IMG/VR virus record: IMGVR_UViG_3300042868_005134
Location: 124,001 to 188,000 of that record
Length of the DNA stretch: 64,000 bases
Strand: one strand, 5' to 3'
The first letter of the stretch is position 1. Every line of letters begins with the position of its first letter. The notes under the pieces are model-generated. The model did no database searches. It was not told the DNA's origin and worked only from the letters and a program-made list of their open reading frames with translations. Below are positions 25,626-56,669 of the stretch, piece after piece. Made by a program: the position numbers and the translations under genes.

Positions 25626-25632
25626 TATTTAT
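25626..25632 (-). promoter_or_regulatory. Late promoter (ATAAATA) overlapping upstream stop codon
   Basis: AATAAATA spans the TAA at 25634-25632; SD GGAGAG lies downstream. Confidence 0.6.
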
Positions 25633-35800: not shown

Positions 35801-38292
35801 TCATTTAAAAAGTCAATAACACTTTCTTGAATAGTTGAAATTGTCGGGAATACAGTATTTGAAATACCGTACATTGTAGCATCACCGTAGCTGTAATTAG
35901 GCAATACTATAAGTTCGGGAACATAGCCAGTTCCATGATCTACAACATTTATAATATATTCTAGTAAATCTTCAGCTGTACTTGCTGGTCCATTAGGGTC
36001 TACGGGAGATCCTACAGATCCAAAACTTTGTGGCGTAGTGTTTCCTACACTAGGAGTTACAGTTTGATTTTTGACAATCCTACCAATTATAGTCTGCCAG
36101 TACTCGTATGCTGCCTGCGTTTCTTCAATTTGACCGGCAATGACGCTACCTTCAGCATAAGCCAGTGCAGCATTTCTAGTTTGTCCATTGCCTTCATAGG
36201 TTAAATCATATGCTATAGCGTCAATAATATATTCTATATCCCGTTTACAAGTGGCAACATCATAGGTGAATACTGGAAAATTAACGGTAATCCATGCTTC
36301 AATTTCATCTTTAATAAAGTTTTTGTTAGCTACTAATAGTGTAGCAGCTTCAGTAAATCCTGGCAATCGTGTGGCAGTAAATGGAATATTGATACTAGGT
36401 GCTGCCGAAGCACCAAGATTAATAATGTTAACAATGGTGTTGAACAAACTAGTAACTCTCGACGTTGCAGTTGCGTTGGCAACCACGCTGGCATTTGCTA
36501 GTACATCTGTTTTTGCTTGTTGTATACCAGCAATAGTTTGTGCTTTTTGTAAGCTAGTTACTTTGCTAGAATAGCTTCTTAAATATGATAGGCCTGCGTA
36601 AACACTTTGATGATTACTGTTAAAAACCATATCGCCTAATACTGCGCTGATGATATAACCCACGTCACGTCGACATTTTTGTTCGTCGTATCTAAAAGTA
36701 AATGTAGGAGAACCAGTTGCTGAAATATAATAAGCTGTAGGATCGTTTCCTAAAAACATTATGCTACCAATTTGAGGTTTATTAGAAATTTCATAAACAT
36801 CGATGGTTAAATTTTTAGCTAGATTTATAATAGCACCAGCTGTCACCGTGGGTGATCCGCCGCCACTAAATGATATGGTTGGCTGAAAGTCATAACCCGA
36901 GCCAGCATTATCTACTTGTATCGAAACTACTTTTTGTAAAATTGGATCAATAACTGCTGTGGCTGTGGCTGTAATGCCGCCTGGTGTTGTTGGTGACTGT
37001 ATAGTAACGCTAGGTGCCACAGTATAGCCAGCGCCTTCTTCGCTTATGGTGATAGAACCAACTGTTGAGTAATAATCGCTGTTTAATACTCCGGTAGCAT
37101 ACGGAGTAGGATAATAACCGTCAGCTACGAATGCTTTCTCTCCAAAGTCGCACACGCTGTTTGAAATACTTAGATAACCGCCTTTTGTGGTATAAAATGC
37201 TTTACTACAAAATACCGCAAAACAACTAACTAACTGCATGTAACCAAAATTAGTGATATGGAATCCTATGCCGCCTTGACTAACTTGGGTAAACGCATCG
37301 CCTACCATAGATTTGATTGGACTTTGACTATTATATTTGTCGCCGTCAATCAGCATACCACCACCACCGCCCTCAACATTAATACCATAGCTGTTTACTT
37401 GTGTTGGATCAATTTCGTTATCCAACAATGGTCGAGGGCCAGTAACCATAGTTCCGTTTGTGTCAGGTTGTTCTGTTTGGAATGGTAGCCATTCAACGCC
37501 ATTACGCATCCAGGGACCATTGATGTTACTACAGTTTTGTACATACGGGCTAGTGTCGACTATAGCATCGCTGTCTATGGCAAATGCATACGCAGGGGCC
37601 TGAAGACCTTTAATTACAAGTTGTGCTACGTAGTCAGCACTGTTGAGATGAAATAAATCAAAACCTTTTTTAACCGTGCCTGTGGCAGACGCACTGGCAA
37701 TATTTGTTCCAAAATCTCTGTACCTAAAAGTTGTTAAAGTTGGTGTGTCTATAACATTTGCTGCGGTATCATCGATACTGGGGAAAGTCGCACAGTCAAC
37801 TCTAACTCTATCTGCCGAAGTTAATCCGTGATTGGTCAGTGTAGTGACTGTGACATACCCGTCTGTTCTATCAACATTAGTAATTGTATAAGTTATTGGG
37901 CCGTTAAGTGGTCTAATAATTGTTGTGCGTAGTGTGTCGCCTACAATAGAAACTTTAGGAGGTACACGTATAGGATTGTCTTCTTCATATTCGCCGCTGC
38001 GTACATAGATAGTTGTACCTTGTTGTGCCACGGCACATGCGGCCTTCAGTGTTCGTTTAGCTTGATTAGGGCCTTCACCTAGGCCGTCGTTGGCGTCGTT
38101 ACCATCTAGGGTAACATACATCACATTTGAGACTGTGGGTCCTGGAATACCAAATCCTGCTCCAAAAACAAGATTACCGTTGATCAATACGTCACTGGTA
38201 GGATTAAACTCTATATTACCATCAGCTTTTTGAAGAATGGTATCGTCTAAAAAACTTTGGGGATTTACATTATGTCTGCGTAAATATTTCAT
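32884..38292 (-). CDS. Large fibre / tail structural protein (1802 aa) with beta-helix-like domain and 57-aa repeats
   Basis: Shares 'YV..DGND.NDG...SGEY.E.NPI.VP..VSIVGD.LR' and 'SPY.QNC' with the 2392-aa protein; 'DGDLQVKGGDLTT' repeats; ends 'IDGGSY'. Confidence 0.75.
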   Translation of the reverse strand: MKYLRRHNVNPQSFLDDTILQKADGNIEFNPTSDVLINGNLVFGAGFGIPGPTVSNVMYVTLDGNDANDGLGEGPNQAKRTLKAACAVAQQGTTIYVRSGEYEEDNPIRVPPKVSIVGDTLRTTIIRPLNGPITYTITNVDRTDGYVTVTTLTNHGLTSADRVRVDCATFPSIDDTAANVIDTPTLTTFRYRDFGTNIASASATGTVKKGFDLFHLNSADYVAQLVIKGLQAPAYAFAIDSDAIVDTSPYVQNCSNINGPWMRNGVEWLPFQTEQPDTNGTMVTGPRPLLDNEIDPTQVNSYGINVEGGGGGMLIDGDKYNSQSPIKSMVGDAFTQVSQGGIGFHITNFGYMQLVSCFAVFCSKAFYTTKGGYLSISNSVCDFGEKAFVADGYYPTPYATGVLNSDYYSTVGSITISEEGAGYTVAPSVTIQSPTTPGGITATATAVIDPILQKVVSIQVDNAGSGYDFQPTISFSGGGSPTVTAGAIINLAKNLTIDVYEISNKPQIGSIMFLGNDPTAYYISATGSPTFTFRYDEQKCRRDVGYIISAVLGDMVFNSNHQSVYAGLSYLRSYSSKVTSLQKAQTIAGIQQAKTDVLANASVVANATATSRVTSLFNTIVNIINLGASAAPSINIPFTATRLPGFTEAATLLVANKNFIKDEIEAWITVNFPVFTYDVATCKRDIEYIIDAIAYDLTYEGNGQTRNAALAYAEGSVIAGQIEETQAAYEYWQTIIGRIVKNQTVTPSVGNTTPQSFGSVGSPVDPNGPASTAEDLLEYIINVVDHGTGYVPELIVLPNYSYGDATMYGISNTVFPTISTIQESVIDFLNDAYGGSVEVTMFPPIQNALALTDVRFHNVSTVSTASTAMEYVGAGVTYNALPFFGGEPVPSNERIEINNGKCFTVTSDQIGNYRIGEFFSVNAITGEVTIDAENINLQGLAAIGPFKRNGIPVGVQLREVSDNTSLLASNGLQDVNTAPTQHAVAVYVQNNYLNKVQSAAQTIVGPVTFSLDVEVNGGDLTTTATTFNILNSTATTVNFAGAATTIGIGAATGTLTIGNTTITGTNATSFNMNGVSPSIVTSSTGTASVFNTNILTGNLFGAATTIAIGAAGASGTITIKNDNVVLDGDLQVKGGDLTTNQTTFNLINDTVTTVNTFGAATTIAIGAAGAAGTVTIKNDNVVLDGDLQIKGGDLTTNQTTFNLINDTVTTVNFASSATVIEIGSSTGTTNINHNLDVDGDINIDGGDLTVSSATFNLANTSATTINAFGAATIIKFGSNTGTTSVLNNFEVDINSRLGLNTDSVNTINGKLTVDLKDNVADIFTIKENTNNYIKINTSNSIELITFGTIPKYEFLNTVDSSSISVASTTFAGGVGIAKSLFVGQNLNVAGNTTLGDDRTADTHTISGSTTVDVPDNTAVAFQIKENTQTYITAVTTNTSESVTIEATPKLLVKNTTDNTLGTAASGSAQFTGGVGIAKNLTVGDNLTVISNLDVDGDANIDGGDLTTSATTFNILNSTATTVNFAGAATTIAMGAATGTLTIGNQTITGTNAATFNMNGTNPSIVSSNTGTASVFNTNILTGNLFGVSTTVNIGTSAAALSTITIGPAITGNIFKIGSTAAGTINLTTDVTSGTVNAWQSVTGTVNIANSGTINLGNSTTATTGAVVGGAFTGNSLKIAGTAAGAVTLNSDVTTGSVNLFNNITTGTLNVAGAGASTINLGSATSTVNIGVLTLTTDLAVQYGGTGQSSFTTNGVIYGQNASGLAVTAASVPGSNATTSYGILTTDVSNVPVWTDTIDGGSY
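34658..34898. repeat. 171-bp period tandem repeat with 70-bp identical core
   Basis: 34658-34727 is identical to 34829-34898; additionally 33539-33588 is identical to 34994-35043. Confidence 0.85.
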
Positions 38293-39891: not shown

Positions 39892-40584
39892 TTAAGCGTT
39901 AGGAATCTTAGCCACTGTGGCAGTAGCAGAACCTAATGTCCAAGCATGTGAAGTATTGTTAGCATACACTGTGCCAGTGCCTTGAGTCAGTCTGGCTCTG
40001 TGTGATGTCAGTTTGGTCACAAAATATGTGCCTGCTGCTGCATCTGTGGCCTGTATATCCATTTCACCTGCGGCTGATGCGGCTGATGCTTTTAATTTAC
40101 AAATCATAGTGCCGTCTGCTGTTCTAACTTTGTAGCGTGTGCCGGATACTTGTTTGATGATGTCTCCAACTTTGCGACTGCCGCCTGTGACAAAAGCAAA
40201 CACTGTGATGGCATTTTCTTGATTGGTTGCTGTACTTACTGCACCTGTGTCCACTTGAAACACGGCTGTGAGAGTGGTTGTGCCAATTGTACCTGTGCCT
40301 GCTGTTACTGTAGGAACTGATGTGTAACCCGAACCTGCTTCCACTATTGTGATGCTGACAATAGCACCTGCAGTGGCTACCACTGTGCCGGTAGCTTGAA
40401 CGCCGCCTGGTAGTTGTGGTTGCGTGAATGTAACTGCGCCGCCAGTGGTATAACCTGTAGAGTTGTTGACACCACCCACAGTAACACTGCCTACTCGACT
40501 GCCACCGATGCCATCATCAGTGGTTACGCTTGCGGAACCGATGTTTCGGTTACCAAAGAATTTTTTATGTAAAGGACGTCCCAT
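39892..40584 (-). CDS. Structural protein downstream of major capsid gene (possible head decoration / fibre)
   Basis: 230 aa, T/G/A-rich, with its own late promoter and SD AAGGAG. Confidence 0.55.
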   Translation of the reverse strand: MGRPLHKKFFGNRNIGSASVTTDDGIGGSRVGSVTVGGVNNSTGYTTGGAVTFTQPQLPGGVQATGTVVATAGAIVSITIVEAGSGYTSVPTVTAGTGTIGTTTLTAVFQVDTGAVSTATNQENAITVFAFVTGGSRKVGDIIKQVSGTRYKVRTADGTMICKLKASAASAAGEMDIQATDAAAGTYFVTKLTSHRARLTQGTGTVYANNTSHAWTLGSATATVAKIPNA

Positions 40585-40673
40585 TTTATTTTCTCCTTAA
40601 GAAATAACAGCGTTCTAGGCTGTACGCGGTTGGATTTCCGCATAAAACTCACACTATGTGAATCATTACTATG

Positions 40674-44577: not shown

Positions 44578-44614
44578 GTTTGTCTCCTATGTGTTTATTG
44601 CAAGGCTGTCGATA

Positions 44615-44621
44615 TATTTAC
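44615..44621 (-). promoter_or_regulatory. Late promoter (GTAAATA)
   Basis: 37 nt upstream of the ATG at 44577; SD AGGAGA follows. Confidence 0.6.
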
Positions 44622-44670
44622 ATATAACTGTAAAATATACGCTTAAATGGTAAGTTTTCGGGGATTTTTG

Positions 44671-44910
44671 TTAAGCAACAGGCTGTGCTGGTGCTTTATA
44701 CATCTGTTCAACAAATTCTAGTTCTTTTTCTTGTTCTAAAATATGCTGTTCACTGGCTTTACGCAGTTCGTTTATCTGCTTTAAAGTCAATCTAGTTTTA
44801 CGTGTGTCACCTTTTCGCACAGAGGTGTCGTCACGGCCAGCATCATAACGACTGTCAGATGTCACGGCCCTAATATCTTTATCAACGTAAAACAATTCTC
44901 GTAGTATCAT
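44671..44910 (-). CDS. Small prohead core-associated protein
   Basis: 79 aa directly after the portal gene, with its own late promoter. Confidence 0.65.
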   Translation of the reverse strand: MILRELFYVDKDIRAVTSDSRYDAGRDDTSVRKGDTRKTRLTLKQINELRKASEQHILEQEKELEFVEQMYKAPAQPVA

Positions 44911-44916
44911 ATACGT

Positions 44917-44923
44917 TATTTAT
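44917..44923 (-). promoter_or_regulatory. Late promoter (ATAAATA) overlapping portal stop codon
   Basis: 6 nt before the ATG at 44910; no SD. Confidence 0.65.
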
Positions 44924-46650
44924 GCTGCCGGTGCTGTAGGAACCGGCCCAGGTGCTGCTGGTGCTGTTCCCGGTGGTGCGCCAGGCATTTCCATTCCTGG
45001 TGGCGCTTCGGTGTCGGCGGCAGCGCCAGCATCAGATTCTATACCTGCTTGACTAACTCCAACGCCGCGTAATTCTCCACTACTGTCAGTGGGTGTTGGC
45101 TTGCCTTTGCCGTTTTCTTCAGCCCACAAGCGTTCGTTTTCTGCAACTTCTTCTTCGCTTAGTCCTAGATAACGTTTCAAAGCAAAACGTTTTGAGATAT
45201 AAGTCTGTTGACTAATAGTACCGTATGTGTTGATACGCTGATTATCTAACTCTGCTTGACGATAAGTGGCAAAGTTTTGCGGCGGTTGGAACTTTAATTC
45301 AAACAGAGCACTGTCAATATTGATGCCTCTTTCATACAAATACAGTTTAAATTCTTGATCAAATACATCTTGCATCAAGCTCTGTAGTCGCATACAGTAG
45401 TTGTTAAATCGCAATTCTTGAATATATGCTGTGCCAACTCTTCCGTCGTTATACTGTGATTGGCTGTCTTCTGCACCAGTTGGCAGATAGCTACTTGGGA
45501 TTCTTAAACCGCGAAATAATTTGTTTGTAAAGTATCTTAAGTCGTCAATTTCACCTAGGTTTGTACCGCCTGGCAGTGTTTCAACTTTACTTCCGCGACC
45601 TTCTGCTGTGGTTGGAAAGAAGTAATCTTCGTTAATGCTTAATGGATTGTAAGCACTATCGATAACGTTGGTACCACCGCCAGTTGCGCTGGGGATACGT
45701 CTTTGATGAATTTCATTTTTAACACGTTCCACAAAGCCCATGGCCAAGTGGCTGGGCATGTTACCCACATCAATGTAAAAAATACGTCTTTCAGGAGCAC
45801 GTTGTATGCGATAGATTAAAATAGCATCTTCTAGTAATTCTTTTTGTTTGAATACTTTAAAAACATTTTCTAATAAACTGTTTCCAAACGGAAAGTTATT
45901 GTCTAGACCTTCGCTTAAACTTAAATGTATCACATGCTTGGCATCTACTGCTAGTTCGTTTTGTTGTGTATCAAAGCGTGTGCCCACAGTGCCACCTTGC
46001 GGATATGAACCAGTCATGCCTCTTGCGGGGCCGCTGCCGTTGGGCCCAGCGTAATTAGTTCCGCGATTGTTGGTGTTAAGATTGTTGGGCTGAATAGTGG
46101 TTGTGACCAAGTCCATAAAATTAGGATTTAAATCACGAATAATGTATTGTTCAGGTTCTTTGCCTTCACTTTCGTTCACAATAATTTTAACTATTTTACT
46201 AGAATCTATGTAAACCCATTTTTTATTTTCAGGATCTCTTACAAAGAATGCATCGCCGTATTTGAATACGTTGCGTACAATTCTAAAAATTCTAGTTTCG
46301 AACTTTTGTAATTTTGTCCATTGCTGTAGATATTCTCTCAAGATGGCAATTTCACTATTAGTAGCTTTGCTCTTGAAAAATAAATGGAATGGTGTTTGAT
46401 TTTCTCTATTCTTTTGACTACAAAATTCAGCAATGATGTCCAAGGCCGCATTGACTTCACTGTCCATGTCCATGGTATCATATTGCAAATAGCGTTCAAT
46501 ACGATTAGGGGCGCCGGAATAAACATCCGGTAAAAAGCTAGAATAGTTTTTTCTAGCTGGGCCTACACCGTTGCCGCTATTAGTTAACGGACTGCTGTTT
46601 GAGCCCGATGATCTTACATTAACAGGGGTGAAATATTTTTTCCAGCTCAT
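44920..46650 (-). CDS. gp20: Portal protein (gp20-like)
   Basis: 'YDTMDMDSEVNAALDII', 'LEDAILIYRIQRAPERRIFYIDVGNMP', 'EDYFFP..AEGRGSKVETLPGG.NLGEIDD..YF..KL...L.IP.S'. Confidence 0.95.
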   Translation of the reverse strand: MSWKKYFTPVNVRSSGSNSSPLTNSGNGVGPARKNYSSFLPDVYSGAPNRIERYLQYDTMDMDSEVNAALDIIAEFCSQKNRENQTPFHLFFKSKATNSEIAILREYLQQWTKLQKFETRIFRIVRNVFKYGDAFFVRDPENKKWVYIDSSKIVKIIVNESEGKEPEQYIIRDLNPNFMDLVTTTIQPNNLNTNNRGTNYAGPNGSGPARGMTGSYPQGGTVGTRFDTQQNELAVDAKHVIHLSLSEGLDNNFPFGNSLLENVFKVFKQKELLEDAILIYRIQRAPERRIFYIDVGNMPSHLAMGFVERVKNEIHQRRIPSATGGGTNVIDSAYNPLSINEDYFFPTTAEGRGSKVETLPGGTNLGEIDDLRYFTNKLFRGLRIPSSYLPTGAEDSQSQYNDGRVGTAYIQELRFNNYCMRLQSLMQDVFDQEFKLYLYERGINIDSALFELKFQPPQNFATYRQAELDNQRINTYGTISQQTYISKRFALKRYLGLSEEEVAENERLWAEENGKGKPTPTDSSGELRGVGVSQAGIESDAGAAADTEAPPGMEMPGAPPGTAPAAPGPVPTAPAA

Positions 46651-49568: not shown

Positions 49569-50384
49569 ATGAATCCATTACAAAAATACTTTAGACAACC
49601 CAAGTTGTTTATCAGTTTGCCCAGCAAAGGGCTGTACTACGAGGAAGGTACTCTACAAGGAGATGTTAGTAAAGTGCCAATTTTTGCCATGACTGGCATG
49701 GATGAACTCATAATGAAAACACCTGACAGCTTGTTTAACGGTGAAGCCACAGTAAAATTAATAGAAAGTTGTTGTCCATATATTACAGACGCACATAAAG
49801 TGCCCAGTATTGATCTAGATGTATTATTAGTTTCCATTAGAATGGCAACATACGGTAAAGAAATGAGTATTGGACATACCTGTACTAACTGTGGTACTGA
49901 AAACGACTTTGCCATTGATTTAACTAGTGTCATGGATCACTATGCTGATAAGAATTTTGACAATAGACTAGTAGTTGACGAAGAAATTACCATTAACTTT
50001 AAGCCGTTAAGCTACGAAGAAATGACAATAGTAAACTTGGAAAATTTTAAATTACAAAAAATGCTTGGTCAGATTGCTGATATAGATATCGACCGTAGGC
50101 AACAAGTCATGGATGATATCTATGCTAAACTAGCTGAAATACAAGTACATGTATTTTTAACTGCCATTGAGTCAGTTCAAATTCCCAATGTATTAGTAAC
50201 TGAGAAAGATCATATTCGAGAGTGGTTGTCTAACACTAACCGAGAACATTATACTCTTATCAAGAGTAAACTTGAAAAGAATAAAGAACTTTGGGAGATG
50301 CCAAAACAAAAAGTCATTTGCGGCAATTGTGGCACTGAAAACGCTATTGAAGTTGTAATGGACCAATCAAGTTTTTTCGTATAA
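49569..50384 (+). CDS. Baseplate hub assembly / tail assembly chaperone (gp26-like)
   Basis: 'MNPLQKYFRQPK.FI.LPS.G.YY', 'AMTGMDE...KTPD.L.NGEA', two CxxC motifs, ends 'SSFFV*'. Confidence 0.8.
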   Translation: MNPLQKYFRQPKLFISLPSKGLYYEEGTLQGDVSKVPIFAMTGMDELIMKTPDSLFNGEATVKLIESCCPYITDAHKVPSIDLDVLLVSIRMATYGKEMSIGHTCTNCGTENDFAIDLTSVMDHYADKNFDNRLVVDEEITINFKPLSYEEMTIVNLENFKLQKMLGQIADIDIDRRQQVMDDIYAKLAEIQVHVFLTAIESVQIPNVLVTEKDHIREWLSNTNREHYTLIKSKLEKNKELWEMPKQKVICGNCGTENAIEVVMDQSSFFV

Positions 50385-50611
50385 AACTGTTACCCTTGTC
50401 TAGATCTGACATCGAAGAGTTGGTTAACAGTTTAGAATTAGATACAAAACAAATAAAAGATGAAATCTTTCGCATAAGTTGGTACATGCGAGGCGGAGTA
50501 AGCAGTCAGGATCTAATGCACGTTTACGGCTACGAGGATAGGCAGATCATGAATGAGATTATAAAAGAAAATATTGAAATTACCAAAAATAGCCGTATGG
50601 CTATTATTTAA
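50372..50611 (+). CDS. Downstream ORF lacking a canonical start; predicted -1 frameshift extension of the gp26-like protein
   Basis: The -1 frame is open from 50351 to the stop at 50611, with no ATG or SD near its start; slippery heptamer T TTT TTC at 50372-50378. Confidence 0.65.
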   Translation, partial: FFRIKLLPLSRSDIEELVNSLELDTKQIKDEIFRISWYMRGGVSSQDLMHVYGYEDRQIMNEIIKENIEITKNSRMAII

Positions 50612-51926
50612 TTTCGTCGTAACCATAGACGCCGTATTTTTTCTTAGGGTCGTCCTGTATTTTTAAAGTAGGATCAGGAATGCCGGCAACACCAACCCTA
50701 GCTTTTATGTCATTAAGTTTGTCGTTGCCTACTAGACGATATCCATTTTCATCACTAATTTGTTGATTATTAATGTAAAGTTTCTTGCCAACCCATTGAA
50801 TATTCATACCATTTGTAGCTTGTCTTGCGCCATCGGCAGCATCACCAGTTGGTGGTTTTACTGCGGTCTTACCAGGTAGTGGACCATCTAGTAGTCCAGC
50901 TTCCTGTAATCCTTTTTCTAGTAAATCAATAGCGGCTGCTGTCAATGCCCCTGTTGGTTCAGTAATTGCTCTTACCAAAGAACTATTTAAAAATTCTTTA
51001 CCAGCACTGGTACGCATGAATATCAAGAAAGCTGGGGCCGCAGGCCCCATTTCAATTAATTTAGAAATACCTTTTGCCACGTTAGTAGGCAAGCTAACAA
51101 ACATACCTAAATATTTTGTTGTTGTAATGCTGGCGCCGCCCAGTGTAGCTGCACCTGTGGCAATACCTTTAAACATGCCTGACATTGCGCCAAAGAATTT
51201 GCTGGCCACTCCAGTATTTAAGGCAACACCAATGGCCAATTCTCCTAACAGTTTCTTTCTTAACTGTTGATACTTGTTATAGGCTTCTTGCTCTGACATT
51301 TTTCCAAAAGGAGAATCTTTGCCAGCTTTATAATCTTGGTAGTCTTCCTCTAACACGGACAAATCCACGTAGTATTCTCTTACAAATTCTAAACCCACAA
51401 CAGTTTTTATCACAGTCATGGCTACATCGGGTATAAATCCCATCCTTGCCTGGGCTGCTGCCTTCATGGAAGCATTGGCACCACGCATTTTTAAGTAGGC
51501 TTTAATTTTTTCAAACCCTACTTTACTGTCAGGGTCAAATTTTCTCAAGTTTATTTTTTCTGTTTTAGCTACTGTTTTTTCTAATTGGGCAAGACGCTCA
51601 GTAACTTTCTTTTTTAACCACTTGCCGCCTTTACTTTGCCATGACTTAGGAATAAGTTTAAGTATTCCTGCTTTACCCAGCTTGGCAAAGCCAGGTGTAA
51701 ACAATAGTACAGCATCTATGAATAGATCATTCCATTCGTCGTCAGTAATTGATTCAGGATCTTGGTTGTATTTGCCAATGAATTTGTATATTTCGTAGGC
51801 ACTCCAAGCACTCATGCCTACAGAGATTGCGGTAATTATTGTACCTATTCCAATACCTGCTATTACAAGAGGTACGGCTTCATTCAATGATTCAGTTCTT
51901 TCAGAGACTATTTGATGGACTTTCAT
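50604..51926 (-). CDS. Hypothetical protein with MKVHQIVSE...LNE leader and hydrophobic segments (putative internal head / ejection protein)
   Basis: 440 aa; late promoter 6 nt upstream; TM-like stretch AVPLVIAGIGIGTIITAISVGMSAW. Confidence 0.6.
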   Translation of the reverse strand: MKVHQIVSERTESLNEAVPLVIAGIGIGTIITAISVGMSAWSAYEIYKFIGKYNQDPESITDDEWNDLFIDAVLLFTPGFAKLGKAGILKLIPKSWQSKGGKWLKKKVTERLAQLEKTVAKTEKINLRKFDPDSKVGFEKIKAYLKMRGANASMKAAAQARMGFIPDVAMTVIKTVVGLEFVREYYVDLSVLEEDYQDYKAGKDSPFGKMSEQEAYNKYQQLRKKLLGELAIGVALNTGVASKFFGAMSGMFKGIATGAATLGGASITTTKYLGMFVSLPTNVAKGISKLIEMGPAAPAFLIFMRTSAGKEFLNSSLVRAITEPTGALTAAAIDLLEKGLQEAGLLDGPLPGKTAVKPPTGDAADGARQATNGMNIQWVGKKLYINNQQISDENGYRLVGNDKLNDIKARVGVAGIPDPTLKIQDDPKKKYGVYGYDEIK

Positions 51927-51932
51927 AATATA

Positions 51933-51939
51933 TATTTAT
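51933..51939 (-). promoter_or_regulatory. Late promoter (ATAAATA)
   Basis: 6 nt before the ATG at 51926; no SD. Confidence 0.7.
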
Positions 51940-52020
51940 TTAAAGTTGAACTACGTTCAACTGTTCTTCGCTCACGCTCGAACTATTTTCTTTATTATTA
52001 ATGCGAAGCATTTAAGTATT

Positions 52021-52373
52021 ATCTAGATTGTTCAGTCACACTTTGCCCTTGCGGGCAAAGAAAATTGAACATTATCTGAGTTGCACAATCCACTTAGCGT
52101 TACAGCAGTTACAGAGGCGGTCATCCGGTACCTCGAGCTGTGTCTTTATTATGACGGCGGTCCACTAACATACGCTAACATGCTAGCAAACGTGGGTATT
52201 TCTCCCTCTTTTTGCCTTTGAAATCCTTGAAACAATCAAACCGCGGCAGCTTTGCGATCCTGGTCCTGTAAAGGATACTGATTGAGTGCTCTTAACGGCA
52301 AGAGTCTACGGATCCCTGCGACACTGGGTCCAGGTTTCTTCTGTTCGCCACCCGAGATTAGCCGGTGGAAGCC
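52021..52373 (-). ncRNA. Large structured non-coding RNA candidate (family unassigned)
   Basis: ORF-free region, visibly more GC-rich than other intergenic gaps, with about 10 identifiable helices, G-U pairs on the minus strand, a GCAA tetraloop and long-range pairings. May extend to about 51945. Confidence 0.7.
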
Positions 52374-52811
52374 TTAACCGTTTAGTTGTTTGCCTTTGAT
52401 GTGTGAGCCGTGTACACGAACAGCGATTTGTCCGTTGTAGTAGTCATCTGATTCTAATACCCGCCTGGAGAATTGTTCTCTTGCCTCGATATAACTACAT
52501 TCAGCCTTTGATGTGCAGTAATAAATTATTTCTCTATGGAAATTTTCTCTGCCTTGTTGTTCTACGTCTTTGTTTAGTTGGTCGTTTGAGCCATAGTATT
52601 CACGCCAGTCAGAATCAATTTTGGATTTAATCCGCTTTTTCTTCTTGGTGCCGTTCTTGAGTTTTACTGTTTTATAAGTTGTTTTAGAAAATTTTGATAA
52701 TTTCTTGCCTATATATTTTCGACCAGTGATGTTATTAGTGATACAATAGACAAATCCAATACATACTTCAGGTAAGGTTTCGACTATTGTGTTTTGATAA
52801 TACCATGACAT
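52374..52811 (-). CDS. Stand-alone GIY-YIG endonuclease
   Basis: 'GFVYCITNNITGRKYIGKK', 'WREYYGS', 'FHREII', 'SYIEAREQF', 'YYNG'; ATG at 52811; single catalytic domain with no obvious C-terminal DNA-binding repeats. Confidence 0.85.
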   Translation of the reverse strand: MSWYYQNTIVETLPEVCIGFVYCITNNITGRKYIGKKLSKFSKTTYKTVKLKNGTKKKKRIKSKIDSDWREYYGSNDQLNKDVEQQGRENFHREIIYYCTSKAECSYIEAREQFSRRVLESDDYYNGQIAVRVHGSHIKGKQLNG

Positions 52812-52818
52812 CAACTAG

Positions 52819-53061
52819 TTAGTTCTTATTGGCCTCTTGATCTTTTAAAAGTGATTCTTTGTACTTGGGACTTTTAACTTTTGGTTTAGTTGCCCTAATT
52901 GCCTGTATTTCTTCGCGCCTAGTGATTGTTAAGTCTCTTATTTCAGCCAAGAGCCGTCGTAGCTCGATACCAGCCACATGAGTTTGTCTAGCTTGCCATC
53001 TCTGGTGTAGCTTGTAGTACTCATGTACTTTTCTCATTAGACTGGTATGTGCGTCTTCCAT
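52819..53061 (-). CDS. Small helical hypothetical protein
   Basis: ATG at 53061 overlaps the TGA of gp46 (TGATG). Confidence 0.65.
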   Translation of the reverse strand: MEDAHTSLMRKVHEYYKLHQRWQARQTHVAGIELRRLLAEIRDLTITRREEIQAIRATKPKVKSPKYKESLLKDQEANKN

Positions 53062-54842
53062 CAATTTTCAATTTCTAAGTCATTAGCATAGCTAGTGAAT
53101 CCATTTTCTTTAATCACTTTGAGTACATTGTTCACTCGTCCGATTAATTCGTCCTTGTGACTGATCAAATAAATGTTTTTCTTACGTTCCCTAGCCATCT
53201 TCTTTAAGACACTTAAGGCATTTTCTACGCCTGCGGCATCTAGTCCGTTGTCAATAAGTTCATCAATGAATAACAAGTTGATACTTTGATACAAACTTTC
53301 CCACACATCTCTAAAACTCCAGCTTAATCCTAAAATTAACCTATTGCGTTCTCCACGTGACAAATTGTCAAAGTCTAGATCCTGCCCAAGTTGTGTAATT
53401 TCCACAGTTAAATCATTTTGAAATACCACTGTGTGGGGTAATCCCATTTTATCCAAATAGTAGGTAAGCCTATTATTAAGGTAGGCAAGATTTTGATCTA
53501 TGATCTTTTTACGGATAAAACTATCTTTGCTGGTCAGCAACTTGAGCAAAAACTCTTGATGGCCCTTAAGTACATTGAGATTGTTTATGCTATCCCATGT
53601 GATTTCTTGAAGCGCAGTATTACGCAAATCATCTATTTGTTCTTGATAAGGATCTGTTTCTTGCTGTCTAGCACCCAACGCAGTTTCTAAACTGGTTAAA
53701 TTGTTTTGATGTTTAAGAGCTTCTTCTAGTGTATCGTAATAAGTTGTTGGCCTACCGTTGATATCGCCGATACCTTCAAGCTCAGTCACAATAATAGCAT
53801 AGCTATCACTGAGGCTTTGAAGATATGTGTAAGCATCTGCTAGATTCTTTTCAGCAAGCACGGACATTTCTTCATGCTTGTGGGTGTGTAGCTCTTGCTC
53901 ACAAGCTGGACAAGTGTTATTTTTTAGTTGCTCTATTTCTTTTGTGTATTTGGTTACACTTTTATCAGCTTGAATTAACGCAGTTTCAATTGTGGCCTTT
54001 TCTTTGTTAAGGCTTTTTATTTTAGCTGCTTGCTCATTGTATGTTTTTAACTTAGCGTGAGCTGTGAGTTCTCGTTCGATGTCTACTGCTTGTAGTTCTT
54101 CTATGGACTTGGTAATTCTATCGCAATCTGTTCGTTGCTGAGCATACCAAGCACTCAGTCTTGTCTCCAAACCAGTAATACTCAATTGAATTTTTTCATT
54201 AGACTTCTTTACAGCTTCGATATCTGCGTTCTCTTGATAAATTTGATCTTTAGTTACTCTCACTTGCTCTTTAAGAGCCTCTGCCTTTTCACTTAGTAAG
54301 GTAATGCCTAACAGTTGTTCAATGATAGCACGTTGTTCGTTGGCTTTCATGCTTAAGAACGGTTCGGTATAGGTATTCAAAGCCAAGATATGCTTAAACA
54401 TATCGTGACTCATACCCATTAAGTCATCAAGGTCCTTTTGCGTTTCCCGCATGTCACCTTGACTGTCATCAGCAGAGTCAACAGAGTGTTCTTGATCGTT
54501 CACATAGAACTTCATGATAGCAGGTTTGCGACCCCGTTCAATCTTGTACTTGTTACCGTCTTTTTCAAAACTCAGTGTAACCAACATGTTTTTGCCATTG
54601 ATCTTGTTGATCAAGTTATCTTTCTTGATATTGGTCAATGCTGTGCCGTATAACGCATAGGTTAAGGCATTGATAATGGTAGTCTTACCGGTACCGTTAC
54701 GGCTTCCACTGTCATCTCCACCTTGATCTAGGTTTTCACCTAGTACAAGGGTAAGTTGTTCTTTACAGAAGTCTACCGCTTGGGTTTGATTACCCACACT
54801 CATGAAATTTTTAACAGTTAGTTCTTTAATTTTAATTGTCAT
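53061..54842 (-). CDS. gp46: Recombination endonuclease ATPase subunit (gp46 / Rad50-SbcC-like)
   Basis: Walker A GTGKTT, coiled coil with CPAC hook, signature LSRGE, Walker B LLFIDE, H-loop ISHK. Confidence 0.95.
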   Translation of the reverse strand: MTIKIKELTVKNFMSVGNQTQAVDFCKEQLTLVLGENLDQGGDDSGSRNGTGKTTIINALTYALYGTALTNIKKDNLINKINGKNMLVTLSFEKDGNKYKIERGRKPAIMKFYVNDQEHSVDSADDSQGDMRETQKDLDDLMGMSHDMFKHILALNTYTEPFLSMKANEQRAIIEQLLGITLLSEKAEALKEQVRVTKDQIYQENADIEAVKKSNEKIQLSITGLETRLSAWYAQQRTDCDRITKSIEELQAVDIERELTAHAKLKTYNEQAAKIKSLNKEKATIETALIQADKSVTKYTKEIEQLKNNTCPACEQELHTHKHEEMSVLAEKNLADAYTYLQSLSDSYAIIVTELEGIGDINGRPTTYYDTLEEALKHQNNLTSLETALGARQQETDPYQEQIDDLRNTALQEITWDSINNLNVLKGHQEFLLKLLTSKDSFIRKKIIDQNLAYLNNRLTYYLDKMGLPHTVVFQNDLTVEITQLGQDLDFDNLSRGERNRLILGLSWSFRDVWESLYQSINLLFIDELIDNGLDAAGVENALSVLKKMARERKKNIYLISHKDELIGRVNNVLKVIKENGFTSYANDLEIEN

Positions 54843-55852
54843 AGGCTATTATAGATACTCAATAATACTTTACTATCGAAAGTGTCACTTTCGATATTGA
54901 CCAACTGATTGCTCACAATTTGATCCACACTTTCAAATGCTTGTATATTGATATCAGTATTGATTTCAACTTCTTTCTTTTCAGATATCAGTGTTAGTTC
55001 TCTAATATCATAATCACTAATAAATTTTTCCTTGATAAAGCTAGCTTCTTCGTAGCTGATGTCAATGTCGAGACTTACTCGCAGATGCATCTTGCTGGTA
55101 ATCAGCGTATCTGCTTCGTCAATCAACTGACTTAATTTAATAGTTCTAAATTTAGGACACTCTGTCCAGTTAATATACTGGGGCACACCATCCCACTCTA
55201 AAATCATCATGCCGCGTTCGTCGTCCCACGTATCAGCATAGTTGTGCGGAAACGCATTACCAATGTAATGCATATTTTGACGTTGTTGTCGTTTATGAAA
55301 GTGTCCGCTAAACCCAAGTTCGTAGTTTTTAAAACTATCCAACTGAATTTCACCATGATCCGGCATCTGAACCATGGCATTCATGAAGAAACTGGGCAAT
55401 TCAAAGTGACCAAAGATATATTTGCCACCTTTCTTGCCTATGGTTTTCCATTCGTCTCCGACAAGCCACGGACATAAGGTGACGTCGCCAATAGTAGTAG
55501 GTTCGTGTACCACAGTAATTCCAGGAATATACTTTCCGAATTCGACGCTGTGAATATCCCGCTTGTCTTTGTAATAAAGATCATGATTACCAGGAAAGAA
55601 ATAAAACTTATCAAAAGCCTGTCCCAGTTTCTCAAGGGCTCTAAGGCTGTAGTCCATAGTTGTAATATTAAGACTATTGCGGTTGTGATGCCAATCGCCC
55701 ATAAAAATACCTGTATCACATCCGTTCTCCTTGGCCTTTGCAATATACCAATCAACAAAATCTTCACAGTCTTGATTGTGTGTTTGACTGTTTGATTTTA
55801 ATCCAAAATGTATGTCTGTAAAGCAAGCAACTTTTTTAAATAAATTACTCAC
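54839..55852 (-). CDS. gp47: Recombination endonuclease nuclease subunit (gp47 / Mre11-SbcD-like)
   Basis: Metallophosphoesterase motifs DIHFG, GDWHHNR, GNHD, GHFE, SGHFH; probable GTG start at 55852 (ORF track gives 55861). Confidence 0.95.
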   Translation of the reverse strand: MSNLFKKVACFTDIHFGLKSNSQTHNQDCEDFVDWYIAKAKENGCDTGIFMGDWHHNRNSLNITTMDYSLRALEKLGQAFDKFYFFPGNHDLYYKDKRDIHSVEFGKYIPGITVVHEPTTIGDVTLCPWLVGDEWKTIGKKGGKYIFGHFELPSFFMNAMVQMPDHGEIQLDSFKNYELGFSGHFHKRQQRQNMHYIGNAFPHNYADTWDDERGMMILEWDGVPQYINWTECPKFRTIKLSQLIDEADTLITSKMHLRVSLDIDISYEEASFIKEKFISDYDIRELTLISEKKEVEINTDINIQAFESVDQIVSNQLVNIESDTFDSKVLLSIYNSL

Positions 55853-56669
55853 CTGATTCACCTTCGAAACGTTTTATAGCATTTGCATGTTCACCAGCGC
55901 CAGTTCTGCTGTAGCTAGGATTCATGCCATTCATCTCCAATAGGTCGTCACGAATATTTTGATTACGTTTTTCTAAATTAATAATGCGAACAAAACTGTT
56001 AGTCACCGCTGCCGTAAAGTAGGCAAATGGGTTATCACTTTTGCTTTCATCAAATTGTAAACCAATTTGTGTTAGTTGTAAAATAGCCTGTCCTTTCATT
56101 TCGTCGTTGTAAGTATAACCTCGTACATTGCCTCTTGTGGCATATCGTTCACATAATTTAATGTACATACGGGCAAGTGTATTTGTAATCTGCCCGTGAT
56201 CTTTGTTAAATTTACCAGTTTCTAAATCACCCTTCCAGTGACTTTTTCCAACACATACTAAAATATCTTTATCGTCGAACTTCCAGTGTTGAAATGGAGG
56301 AAAATTAACTTTATCTCTATGATCCGCTATGGTCTTTGGATTTTTTTTACGGGTACCGTTTAACGGAATGTGCTCAAACGACATAATTCTAAACACAATG
56401 TCTGTTTTAGCAATCTTTTTATAGTCCACTTCGCAGTCTGCTTGTTTGACTTTTTCCCCGGCAGCTTTACGTCGAGCATACGCCTCTTGACTCATTCGTT
56501 TGGCCTGTGCCCGTTTAGCTTCAGCAACAGTTCGAATGTTAATTTTATCAACAGTGGGCAATATCAAATCATAACGATGATATTCTGGTTGGGTAAATGA
56601 GCAGAATGTATTTTTGCTTTTGTGTATTTCTTCTAATAAATCTTTGTTGTTTAAGTAATTAACTTTCAT
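55845..56669 (-). CDS. gp55: Late-transcription sigma factor (gp55-like) with large insertion
   Basis: 'YLNNKDLL', 'N.RGYTYNDEM', 'FD..KSDNPFAYFT....NSF.R....EK'; directly upstream of gp47/gp46. Confidence 0.85.
   Translation of the reverse strand: MKVNYLNNKDLLEEIHKSKNTFCSFTQPEYHRYDLILPTVDKINIRTVAEAKRAQAKRMSQEAYARRKAAGEKVKQADCEVDYKKIAKTDIVFRIMSFEHIPLNGTRKKNPKTIADHRDKVNFPPFQHWKFDDKDILVCVGKSHWKGDLETGKFNKDHGQITNTLARMYIKLCERYATRGNVRGYTYNDEMKGQAILQLTQIGLQFDESKSDNPFAYFTAAVTNSFVRIINLEKRNQNIRDDLLEMNGMNPSYSRTGAGEHANAIKRFEGESGE

What the first reader, a model, noticed from the sequence alone, without database searches (positions are those of the whole stretch)
52021..52373. Large, ornate non-coding RNA candidate (~350-430 nt) in a structural-gene-dense region
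Seen: the only long ORF-free gap in the window, packed with minus-strand helices. These are CCACC/GGUGG (52368-52348); GGACCC/GGG(A)UCC (52331-52310); long-range CUCUUGCC (52304-52297) with GGC-AAA-AAGAG (52216-52206); CAAUCA/UGAUUG (52284-52279 with 52238-52233) enclosing UCCU-UUAC-AGGA and GAUCGC/GCGGUU; GGG-AGAAAUA-CCC; a 32-nt hairpin (52191-52160) with at least four G-U pairs, fixing the strand; GUC/GAC; ACAGC/GCUGU enclosing GAGG/CCUC and CGG-AUGA-CCG; and AGAU+UGUUCA/UGAACA+AUCU enclosing CUUUGCCC-GCAA-GGGCAAAG. GACCGCC occurs twice. I could not match it to tRNA, tmRNA, RNase P, group I/II intron or small-ribozyme cores. Inference: a functional multi-domain RNA, either new or a member of the large phage-associated classes (GOLLD/ROOL-type), which I cannot distinguish by eye.
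Basis: partly seen in the sequence, partly recalled or inferred. Interest (0 to 1): 0.85.

Follow-up and report, generated by a model that had tools for sequence, protein, structure and literature searches.

The report
Large phage RNA, Polynucleobacter-1 family
The gap holds a real, roughly 440-base, pseudoknot-rich non-coding RNA of a T4-like freshwater phage; its first third is the already catalogued but functionally unexplained "Polynucleobacter-1" RNA, and the rest is a conserved core that the catalogue lacks.

Summary
Window 52382..51944 (minus strand) is the longest ORF-free stretch and encodes a conserved, structured RNA. It is not a new class. Rfam RF01718 (Polynucleobacter-1 RNA) matches 52373..52230 at 80.7 bits against a gathering score of 37. 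The 2010 discovery alignment already carried a "tail" with one pseudoknot, reaching about 52094.

What I add:
- The RNA runs about 439 nt, through a covariation-supported 3' domain that is in neither Rfam nor the 2010 structure.
- There are two further pseudoknots. One uses the last sense codons of the upstream GIY-YIG gene.
- The RNA sits at one syntenic place (gp47-gp46-GIY-YIG-RNA-baseplate hub) in well over 100 T4-like phage contigs.
- The middle and 3' part is the conserved core. The Rfam 5' module is replaced by unrelated sequence in sister clades.
- Two non-complementary 7-mers, 53 nt apart, are identical to each other in every RNA although 11 or more variants exist.

Function is unknown. 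My best guess is a trans-acting folded RNA made as the 3' end of an early or middle operon, with the twin 7-mers as recognition sites. I class it as a new member of a known kind, of moderate interest.

The parts
51944..52382 (-). Full extent of the conserved structured RNA, about 439 nt, from the 5' strand of pseudoknot PK0 to the end of hairpin P16
   Evidence: Conservation profile of 89 non-redundant homologues. Boundaries are set by the covarying PK0 and P16.
52230..52373 (-). 5' domain, the Rfam RF01718 Polynucleobacter-1 match. Helices: P1 52368-64/52352-48, P2 52333-28/52322-16, P3 52304-01/52292-89, P4 52284-79/52238-33, P5 52275-73/52266-64, P6 52259-54/52244-39.
   Evidence: cmscan 80.7 bits against gathering 37, E 1.6e-15, model positions 1-141 of 141. 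P1, P3 and P4 covary.
52378..52382 (-). PK0 5' strand (AACGG), the last sense codons of the GIY-YIG ORF. It pairs with the P3 loop CCGUU at 52298-52294.
   Evidence: Many independent compensatory variants: AUCGG/CCGAU, GCGG/CCGC, UCAG/CUGA, GCCAA/UUGGC, CUGCCA/UGGCAG, UCACCAA/UUGGUGA. The pair is among the top covariation pairs. It is not in Rfam or the 2010 structure.
52094..52229 (-). Middle domain. Elements: conserved GGCAAAAAGAG; P7 52206-04/52196-94; P8 52191-79/52172-60; PK1 (P8 loop 52178-73 with 52099-94); PK2 (52154-51 with 52124-21); P9 52141-37/52106-02; P10 52134-31/52117-14; invariant GGUACCGG..ACCGCC.
   Evidence: the count of structure pairs on A1: 92.4% of cells paired against 77.3% in shuffles (0 of 500 reach it), slid controls 32-50%, 29 of 38 pairs changed on both sides. 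PK1 is 94% paired and PK2 97.9%. P7, P8, P9, P10 and PK1 are in the 2010 'tail'; PK2 is not.
52071..52081 (-). Motif copy 1, ACUC + 7-mer AGAUAAU
   Evidence: The 7-mer is identical to that of copy 2 in 88 of 88 alignment-anchored RNAs and 113 of 117 regex-anchored RNAs, across 11 variants.
52035..52060 (-). P14 hairpin CUUUGCCC-GCAA-GGGCAAAG (52060-53/52048-41), followed by the near-invariant GUGUGAC (52041-35)
   Evidence: 87.6% paired, 6 of 8 pairs changed on both sides. z-score -4.17. Conservation.
52018..52028 (-). Motif copy 2, AUCU + 7-mer AGAUAAU. AUCUAGAU is also a palindrome.
52000..52012 (-). Small hairpin AAUGC-UUC-GCAUU, which has UUCG-type loops in relatives
   Evidence: Inner pairs are 98.9% paired with changes on both sides; the outer pairs align poorly. 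z-score -3.7.
51963..51983 (-). P15: GUUC-GA-GC-[GUGA]-GC-GA-A-GAAC, a stem with a tandem G-A internal loop and a GNRA loop
   Evidence: Inner G-C pairs are 100% paired with compensatory GC-to-AU changes. The outer stem covaries by eye (GCUUC/GAAGC, GUUGUU/AACAAC, AUCACU/AGUGAU), but the alignment register is noisy at 62.5%.
51944..51962 (-). P16 terminal hairpin AGUUGAAC-GUA-GUUCAACU
   Evidence: 96.8% paired, 8 of 8 pairs changed on both sides. z-score -4.29. No U-run follows, and no terminator is predicted on this strand.
52374..52811 (-). Upstream gene: a 145-aa protein that is a single GIY-YIG domain (PF19835 SegE_GIY-YIG). The RNA starts inside its last codons.
   Evidence: Pfam E 3.3e-32. 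phrog_447. AF2 model pLDDT 96. It is the upstream neighbour of the RNA in nearly all loci.
51933..51940 (-). AATAAATA, a 7-of-8 match to the T4 late-promoter consensus TATAAATA (consensus from my own knowledge), just after the RNA and before the next ORF
   Evidence: Sequence. Many related loci have TATAAATA at the same place. Promoter function is inferred, not tested.

Best explanation
SHOWN:
- Window 52382..51944 (minus strand) encodes a roughly 440-nt structured RNA of the Polynucleobacter-1 family (RF01718).
- It has about 15 helices and three pseudoknots.
- It lies on the same strand as, and directly behind, the gp47-gp46-orf81-GIY-YIG gene string of a T4-like freshwater phage.
- The next transcription unit starts just after it, with a late-promoter-like motif or, in many relatives, a convergent baseplate-hub gene.

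INFERRED:
- It is transcribed as the 3' end of that early or middle operon, since there is no room for a promoter of its own. It then persists as a compactly folded RNA.
- It acts in trans rather than on its own mRNA. It is kept when the upstream gene is displaced or replaced and when the downstream gene changes. Its unpaired nucleotides are the most conserved ones. Its 5' module can be swapped while the core stays.
- The two exposed, always-identical 7-mers (after ACUC and after AUCU) are most simply read as two equivalent recognition sites for one partner. That partner would be a dimeric or twice-bound protein, or a nucleic acid with a matching sequence.
- The pseudoknotted body acts as a scaffold. 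The nearest working analogy is to other large ornate phage-borne RNAs whose chemistry is also unknown.
For: - Family membership.
- Whole-gap conservation of 70-90% in diverged contigs.
- Covariation of the middle domain and two pseudoknots.
- Covariation of the 3' domain.
- PK0.
- Fixed synteny in over 100 contigs, with poorly conserved flanking small ORFs.
- The RNA is kept when a 257-300 aa ORF sits between it and the GIY-YIG gene, and when a PDDEXK nuclease gene replaces GIY-YIG in L163.
- The core is kept with different 5' modules.
- The Polynucleobacter-chromosome subfamily has no ORF stop annotated just upstream.
- Identity-coupled 7-mers.
- No cis partner that covaries with the 7-mers.
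Against: - There are no expression data of any kind. The transcript ends are inferred.
- The near-universal GIY-YIG neighbour and the overlap of PK0 with its last codons would also fit a cis role on that mRNA.
- No partner for the 7-mers was found in the 64-kb window.
- Identity of the two 7-mers is counted over related sequences. It reflects at least about 10 concerted switches, not 113 independent ones.
- Part of the 3' domain (P12 against the long-range helix) is structurally unresolved.
Confidence: 0.4

Rival explanations
1. It is a cis-acting 3'-UTR element of the GIY-YIG (operon) mRNA. The folded RNA blocks 3'-to-5' decay, or insulates the end of the operon where convergent or late transcription begins. 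Because PK0 contains the last sense codons, it may also couple folding to translation of the nuclease gene: a terminating ribosome must melt PK0.
For: - The RNA abuts the GIY-YIG stop codon in most loci.
- The PK0 5' strand is the last 1-2 codons.
- The RNA sits at the end of a transcription unit, often facing a convergent gene.
- The 2010 authors also noted the fixed upstream gene family.
Against: - About 440 nt with three pseudoknots and invariant loops is far more than a decay block needs.
- The RNA persists when another ORF intervenes, when GIY-YIG is replaced by a PDDEXK gene, and without an adjacent ORF stop in the Polynucleobacter subfamily.
- PF19835 genes in Melnitz, C48C1, BUCT-ZZ01 and a Variovorax phage lack the RNA.
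- No intrinsic-terminator signature was found.
Confidence: 0.25
2. It is a large ribozyme. The size, the pseudoknots and the many invariant unpaired nucleotides serve a catalytic core, for example self-processing that releases the RNA from the mRNA.
For: Invariant junction blocks are present: GGUACCGG..ACCGCC, ACCGCCG, GGGCAAAGUGUGAC and GAGC-GNRA-GCGAA with tandem G-A. The pseudoknotted architecture is shown.
Against: There is no similarity to any ribozyme family in Rfam, even at E <= 10. No candidate cleavage site or conserved processing junction was identified. The conserved features fit a protein-binding scaffold equally well.
Confidence: 0.12
3. It is the RNA partner of the adjacent nuclease. 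The 145-aa catalytic-domain-only GIY-YIG protein has no separate DNA-binding domain but does have a long Lys-rich beta-hairpin. On this view it uses the RNA as a scaffold or specificity module, with the 7-mers acting as short guides.
For: - The RNA overlaps the 3' end of the nuclease ORF.
- The protein is a bare GIY-YIG domain with a basic hairpin insertion.
- In L163 another nuclease fold (PDDEXK) occupies the same place upstream of the RNA.
- The lineage-variable but internally identical 7-mers look like specificity elements.
Against: - The same protein family is widespread without the RNA.
- In several loci an unrelated ORF separates the gene and the RNA.
- A 7-nt guide is too short for genome targeting.
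- No complementary target is enriched in the window.
- No RNA-guided GIY-YIG enzyme is known (my own knowledge).
Confidence: 0.07
4. It is not an RNA feature. The conservation reflects a DNA-level element such as an origin, protein-binding repeats or a recombination site, or it is chance.
For: The two direct 11-nt repeats could be DNA sites for a protein. The whole-region folding energy is unremarkable.
Against: Compensatory base-pair changes are abundant, including G-U pairs that work on one strand only, in about 14 helices and three pseudoknots. Shuffled and slid controls are far lower. There is also a strong covariance-model match.
Confidence: 0.02

Closest known systems
Polynucleobacter-1 RNA motif (Rfam RF01718; Weinberg et al. 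2010, Genome Biol 11:R31, PMC2864571)
   Same: - The full 141-position model matches at 80.7 bits.
- The helices P1-P6 are the same.
- The unpublished-in-Rfam 'tail' is the same: P7, P8, the three-way region and the loop pseudoknot of the authors' ACTUAL_MOTIF.
- The position downstream of the same gene family is the same.
- The freshwater origin is the same.
   Different: - The RNA here is followed through about 150 further nucleotides (52093-51944) that covary but are not in the published structure.
- Two more pseudoknots (PK0, PK2) are added.
- It lies in an identifiable T4-like phage genome. The authors found none in sequenced purified phages, and none of 50,697 phage records matches by blastn even now.
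- The upstream family is identified as PF19835 GIY-YIG.
GOLLD, ROOL and OLE: large ornate bacterial and phage RNAs (Weinberg 2010, 2017; cryo-EM in PMC12286853)
   Same: It works like them only in a loose sense. It is several hundred nucleotides long, rich in pseudoknots and conserved loops, phage-borne (as GOLLD and ROOL are), and of unknown biochemical function. It has loop-loop pairings and palindromes (GGUACC, AUCURGAU) of the kind that could also act between molecules.
   Different: There is no sequence or structure match. It is smaller. It is not next to tRNA genes. Oligomerisation is untested.
HEARO / IscB and TnpB omega-RNAs (nuclease-associated RNAs)
   Same: A structured RNA is tied to a small nuclease gene, and as with TnpB it overlaps the 3' end of the nuclease ORF.
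   Different: - There is no Rfam match.
- The nuclease is GIY-YIG, not RuvC/HNH.
- There is no transposon end.
- There is no terminal variable guide of 16-20 nt.
- The association is not obligatory in either direction.

Membership tests
Polynucleobacter-1 RNA (RF01718) | Covariance-model score at or above the curated gathering score over the whole model | tested here: met
   80.7 bits against 37, E 1.6e-15, model positions 1-141 of 141, not truncated
Polynucleobacter-1 RNA (RF01718) | Helices of the consensus kept through compensatory changes | tested here: met
   P1 shows AU/GC/CG/UA types. P3 shows UA:47, GC:14, AU:11, CG:9. P4 and P6 are among the top covariation pairs.
Polynucleobacter-1 RNA (RF01718) | The optional 3' 'tail' of the discovery alignment: two hairpins, a three-way region, and a pseudoknot between the hairpin loop and a downstream strand | tested here: met
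   The SS_cons and SS_cons_1 of the authors' Stockholm file correspond to P7, P8, P9-P11 and PK1. These are 87-100% paired with changes on both sides.
Polynucleobacter-1 RNA (RF01718) | Location downstream of a GOS11034 / PSSM2_218-like gene | tested here: inconclusive
   The upstream gene is PF19835, with hundreds of cyanophage homologues. I did not test whether PF19835 is the same family as GOS11034 or PSSM2_218.
GOLLD / ROOL / HEARO / OLE | Match to the family covariance model | tested here: not met
   No match at gathering score in the window, and none at E <= 10 in 51500-53200
Group I / group II introns, RNase P, tmRNA, tRNA, known small ribozymes | Match to the family model. For an intron, also a host gene split by it. 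| tested here: not met
   No Rfam match and no ARAGORN hit. gp46 upstream is full length against its profile, and the GIY-YIG ORF ends in a stop codon.
Intrinsic (Rho-independent) terminator | G+C-rich hairpin followed by a run of U | tested here: not met
   No minus-strand terminator-like site in 51500-53300. P16 is A+U-rich and is followed by UUUAAAU.
GIY-YIG nuclease superfamily (the upstream protein) | Profile match and the catalytic motif residues (GIY, YIG, Arg, Glu, Asn) | tested here: met
   PF19835 E 3.3e-32. Invariant or near-invariant in 57 diverse relatives: Y22, Y33, G35, R93, E109, N126. However, no solved-structure neighbour was found by profile or Foldseek.

The most novel reading that the evidence does not exclude
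The RNA is a specificity-carrying scaffold. Its two always-identical, lineage-variable 7-mers base-pair with, or are read together with, a matching sequence in a trans partner. That partner could be a phage or host nucleic acid, or a nuclease-RNA complex with the neighbouring GIY-YIG or PDDEXK enzyme. This would make it a new kind of phage RNA-directed recognition device. The Rfam 'Polynucleobacter-1' motif would then be only one of several interchangeable 5' accessory modules on a previously undescribed conserved core.
Probability: 0.12. Interest if true: 0.85.

Novelty: new member of a known kind. Interest (0 to 1): 0.5.

Why it matters
Polynucleobacter-1 has stayed an orphan motif since 2010. 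It is known from 16 sequences and is stored in Rfam as a 141-nt fragment typed "sRNA".

This analysis changes that picture in four ways:
- The natural molecule is about 440 nt with three pseudoknots.
- It belongs to abundant T4-like freshwater phages, at a fixed genomic address.
- Its most conserved part is outside the Rfam model.
- It carries an unusual twin-7-mer signature.

These points turn a catalogue entry into a tractable target for structure work such as cryo-EM and SHAPE, and for partner hunting. They also suggest that the Rfam model should be rebuilt around the core.

The work does not reveal a new class or a function, so the finding is useful rather than surprising.

Tried and rejected
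- **Genome-collection scan.** I used the invariant block GGTACCGGNNNACCGCC. It returned only chance hits in G+C-rich bacteria, and model R1 found 0 matches in them. That scan was wasted, so the Polynucleobacter chromosome copy could not be fetched.
- **RNAalifold on the raw MAFFT alignment of the 3' domain**. It found only 4 pairs because indels misalign the stems. I replaced it with a covariance model and re-alignment.
Neither was decisive.
- **Search for a cis sequence complementary to the 7-mers**. It found only an invariant U-rich strand (52236-52230) that pairs promiscuously and does not covary.
- **Search of the 64-kb window for the 7-mer or its complement**. Counts were as expected by chance.
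- **blastn of the locus against 50,697 phage records**. No match.
- **Rfam scan of the nearest cultured relatives** (Melnitz, C48C1, Variovorax phage, BUCT-ZZ01), and R1 on the same loci. No RNA was found.
- **Group I intron with the GIY-YIG ORF in a loop.** Rejected: the flanking genes are complete and there is no intron-model match.
- **Hammerhead-like reading of P15** (GA-stem-GAA). Rejected: the flanking strands pair with each other.
- **C/D-box, boxB and anticodon-loop readings of the 7-mer.** None fits all variants.
- **The codon-plus-stop pattern in most 7-mers** (NNN-UAA or NNN-UGA). No ORF runs into them, and the variants CGA, UCA and GAA break the pattern.
- **PDB sequence and fold searches for the GIY-YIG protein**. 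No neighbour was found.

Full report
**What is there.** Window 51927-52373 is the longest stretch without an ORF. The next candidate gap, 44578-44919, contains a 79-aa ORF. It lies on the minus strand. Upstream is a 145-aa gene whose stop codon TAA is at 52376-52374. Downstream is a 440-aa ORF starting at 51926.

The neighbourhood is that of a T4-like phage:
- late sigma factor gp55 (55845-56669);
- gp47/SbcD (54839-55861);
- gp46/SbcC (53061-54842);
- an 81-aa ORF;
- the 145-aa protein, a single GIY-YIG domain of Pfam family PF19835 (E 3.3e-32);
- the gap;
- a 440-aa protein with no family match;
- a baseplate hub gene on the other strand (49569-50384);
- portal gp20 (44920-46650).

There are no tRNA genes in the window.

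**Identity.** Rfam cmscan gives a full-length match of RF01718, Polynucleobacter-1 RNA, at 52373..52230 (minus strand). The score is 80.7 bits against a gathering score of 37, with E 1.6e-15. A permissive scan of 51500-53200 shows nothing else better than E = 4, so there is no GOLLD, ROOL, HEARO, intron, RNase P or ribozyme model match.

The motif comes from Weinberg et al. 2010 (PMC2864571). Their supplement makes four statements:
- The motif occurs in environmental sequences and one Polynucleobacter genome.
- It mostly lies downstream of genes of family GOS11034, with possible homology to cyanophage locus PSSM2_218.
- The 3' half "is not always detected".
- It was not found in any sequenced purified phage.

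Their Stockholm file shows that the real motif (ACTUAL_MOTIF) is about twice as long as the search motif that became the Rfam seed. It includes a "tail" with two hairpins, a three-way region and a 7-bp pseudoknot. In window coordinates the published structure therefore reaches from 52373 to about 52094.

**How far the RNA really extends.** I collected 80 loci from IMG/VR by the GIY-YIG protein and about 120 by a DNA pattern from the Rfam consensus. blastn and a MAFFT alignment of 89 non-redundant sequences show 70-90% nucleotide identity across the whole gap, from just inside the ORF to about 51945. Invariant blocks alternate with variable stretches. The neighbouring small ORFs are much less conserved: orf81 at 34-65% amino-acid identity, and p440 at 25-39% or absent.

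**Structure, tested by covariation.**

*Middle domain (52235-52085, alignment A1).* A structure with P7, P8, P9, P10, P11 and two pseudoknots has 92.4% of cells paired, against 77.3% in shuffles (0 of 500 reach the observed value) and 32-50% when the partners are slid. 29 of 38 pairs change on both sides.
- PK1 joins the P8 loop UUAGCG (52178-73) to CGCUAA (52099-94). This is the published pseudoknot.
- PK2 joins UCAU (52154-51) to AUGA (52124-21). It is new, 97.9% paired, with UA/CG, GC/AU and UA/AU/GC exchanges.
- P11 (CGG/CCG) does not covary.

*3' domain.* I built covariance model R1 from 52100-51933 with only the confident hairpins and re-aligned 72 hits. 85.7% of cells are paired against 69.1% in shuffles (0 of 500), slid controls give 35-49%, and 25 of 27 pairs change on both sides.
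- P16 is 96.8% paired, with all 8 pairs covarying.
- P14 is 87.6% paired.
- The inner pairs of P15 are 100% paired.

This alignment is fitted to the model, which favours the structure. P16 and inner P15 are nonetheless already clear on the raw MAFFT alignment, at 86% and 98%.

*5' end.* AACGG (52382-78), the last sense codons of the GIY-YIG ORF, pairs with the P3 loop CCGUU (52298-94). The pairing is kept through many different sequences: AUCGG/CCGAU, GCGG/CCGC, UCAG/CUGA, GCCAA/UUGGC, CUGCCA/UGGCAG and UCACCAA/UUGGUGA. The RNA therefore starts inside the ORF.

**Which reader helices fail.**
- GGACCC/GGG(A)UCC is replaced by the Rfam pairing CUGGAC/GUC-CAG.
- The long-range CUCUUGCC:GGC-AAA-AAGAG has no compensatory change and is unpaired in most sequences at three positions. 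The local CUCU/AGAG hairpin covaries instead.
- GUC/GAC competes with the supported PK2.
- The helix around P14 (AGAU+UGUUCA/UGAACA+AUCU) against a local hairpin (P12) remains open.

The whole region is not unusually stable (z = -0.86), although individual hairpins are. G-U pairs are frequent, for example 71 of 74 sequences at one P8 pair. This fixes the strand.

**Distribution and context.** R1 finds the 3' domain in 71 of the 80 protein-selected loci. Eight of the nine misses are contigs that end within about 300 nt of the gene; the ninth, L070, has about 680 nt downstream and stays unexplained. It also finds the domain in 56 of the pattern-selected loci. It finds nothing in 732 kb of unrelated bacterial DNA and nothing in the closest cultured relatives of the protein: Methylophilales phage Melnitz (47% identity), phage C48C1, a Variovorax phage and Synechococcus phage BUCT-ZZ01. 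In three of those records the PF19835 gene follows the ribonucleotide reductase genes instead. No phage record in a 50,697-record collection matches the locus by blastn.

Synteny is constant: gp47-gp46-(variable)-GIY-YIG-RNA-(variable)-hub. The link to the GIY-YIG gene is not absolute:
- In seven loci an unknown 257-300 aa ORF separates them.
- In L163 a PDDEXK_15 nuclease gene (E 1.1e-27) stands in place of GIY-YIG.
- In the Polynucleobacter-chromosome subfamily no ORF stop is annotated just upstream.

**A modular family.** In a sister clade (L028, L030, L036, L041-43, L053, L055, L068, L073, L082, L084) R1 scores 45-89 bits. RF01718 is not found there, even at E <= 0.1. The alignment shows the same core..CCGUUGA..GGGGUACCGGUCAACCGCCUCC.., the two motif copies, a P14-like hairpin, P15 and P16. 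It sits behind a completely different 5' part of about 330 nt.

A third form, L325, has the same GIY-YIG-RNA-hub-portal order and yet another 5' part. The conserved heart of the family is therefore the part that Rfam lacks, and the Rfam motif is an exchangeable 5' module. These variants are in related loci, not in the window.

**The twin 7-mers (unexplained).** Copy 1 is ACUC-AGAUAAU (52081-52071). Copy 2 is AUCU-AGAUAAU (52028-52018). They are not complementary. Four position pairs at a constant offset of 53 rank among the strongest covariation signals, with 0-24% Watson-Crick pairs.

Anchored on the alignment, the two 7-mers are identical in 88 of 88 RNAs. Anchored by pattern over all loci, they are identical in 113 of 117 distinct cores, and the four exceptions are anchor errors. 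Eleven variants occur:
- AGAUAAU, GGAUAAU, GGAUGAA, GGAUGAU, GCAUAAU, AGAUGAG;
- AGAUGAU, AGAUGAA, AGACGAA, AGAUCAA, AGCGAAA.

ACAUGAA is seen by eye in L037. The Polynucleobacter subfamily has AGCGAAA twice.

These counts are over related sequences. The safe statement is that at least about ten switches happened in both copies and no intermediate is seen. I found no covarying complement inside the RNA and no excess of the motif or its complement in the window. Two equivalent sites read by one partner is the simplest reading, but it is an inference.

**The upstream protein.** It keeps the GIY-YIG signature residues (Y22, Y33, G35, R93, E109, N126) across 57 diverse relatives. 2,085 representative clusters match at E <= 0.001. 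It folds confidently (pLDDT 96), with a long Lys-rich beta-hairpin inserted after the YIG strand. It has no solved-structure neighbour by profile or Foldseek. It is single-copy and syntenic, so it does not behave like a mobile homing endonuclease here. The resemblance of its size and its nrd-adjacent position in other phages to T4 endonuclease II (denA) rests on my own memory and was not tested.

**How it most likely works.**

*Shown:* a conserved, pseudoknotted RNA of about 440 nt at the 3' end of the gp47-gp46-GIY-YIG gene string. It begins within the last codons of the ORF. It ends at a covarying hairpin that is not a canonical terminator. A T4-late-promoter-like AATAAATA follows it; many relatives have TATAAATA there.

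*Inferred:* it is co-transcribed with that operon and persists as a folded RNA that acts in trans, with the body as scaffold and the twin 7-mers as recognition sites. I put about 0.4 on this.

*Rivals:*
- a cis 3'-UTR stabiliser or insulator coupled to translation termination through PK0 (0.25);
- a ribozyme (0.12);
- an RNA partner of the neighbouring nuclease (0.07);
- a DNA-level or chance feature (0.02), which the covariation excludes.

**Verdict.** The feature is real and the strand is right. The interpretation as a new or GOLLD/ROOL-type RNA is wrong. It is a full-length member of the known orphan family Polynucleobacter-1. This analysis extends that family by a 3' domain, two pseudoknots, a phage address, modular 5' ends and the twin-7-mer signature. 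Function remains unknown.

Noticed in passing
window 40582-40663 (-): A second Rfam match: freshwater-2 RNA (RF02980, cis-regulatory type), 74.3 bits against gathering 49.9. It ends in AAGGAGAAAAUAAAAUG, the ribosome-binding site and start codon of the 230-aa ORF 39892-40584.
   Followed up: no
L028, L030, L036, L041-L043, L053, L055, L068, L073, L082, L084 (about 260-540 nt after the GIY-YIG stop): In a sister phage clade the same RNA core is preceded by a different, internally conserved 5' region of about 330 nt with obvious hairpins. It has no Rfam match even at E <= 0.1. This is an undescribed module.
   Followed up: partly
L325:1699-2150 (+): A third architecture of the RNA, with twin 7-mer AGCGAAA, behind a 139-aa PF19835 gene and before hub and portal genes. 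There is no RF01718 match.
   Followed up: partly
L163:1666-2184 (-): A PDDEXK_15 (PF24608) endonuclease gene occupies the place of the GIY-YIG gene directly upstream of the RNA. This is a non-homologous nuclease swap.
   Followed up: partly
L090:10375-11148, L094:6141-6959, L119:10623-11402, L130:5687-6487(-), L039:2438-3232, L021:3372-4274, L111:1960-2733: An ORF of 257-300 aa with no Pfam family is inserted between the GIY-YIG gene and the RNA in several loci. Larger ORFs (277-356 aa) sit there in L033, L038, L079 and L062.
   Followed up: partly
protein P0093 (191 aa), homologue of window 52374-52811: In one metagenomic variant the stop codon is lost and the called protein runs on into the RNA (…KGKQLNGQSSHRLISCAEQKK…). 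This is an annotation read-through of non-coding sequence.
   Followed up: no
window 51933-51940 (-), and the same place in many related loci: AATAAATA here, and TATAAATA in relatives, lies right after hairpin P16. This resembles the T4 late promoter. The next ATG lies only about 6 nt further and has no Shine-Dalgarno sequence.
   Followed up: no
window 50604-51926 (-): A 440-aa ORF with an N-terminal hydrophobic segment has no Pfam or PHROG match. It is poorly conserved or absent at this position in related contigs (25-39% identity).
   Followed up: partly
window 52374-52811 (-): The GIY-YIG protein models at pLDDT 96, but Foldseek finds no PDB neighbour (best E 0.42, TM below 0.2). The long Lys-rich beta-hairpin insertion may mask the small core fold.
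   Followed up: partly
L001 (Melnitz), L002 (C48C1), L004 (BUCT-ZZ01): In these cultured phages the PF19835 homologue lies just downstream of the ribonucleotide reductase genes and is annotated 'NAD synthetase' or hypothetical. No RNA follows it.
   Followed up: partly
window 12999-17873, 20214-25598, 25632-32810, 32884-38292 (-): Four very large ORFs (1624, 1794, 2392 and 1802 aa) lie in a row in the structural region. Related contigs reach 260-350 kb, which suggests a jumbo T4-like phage.
   Followed up: no
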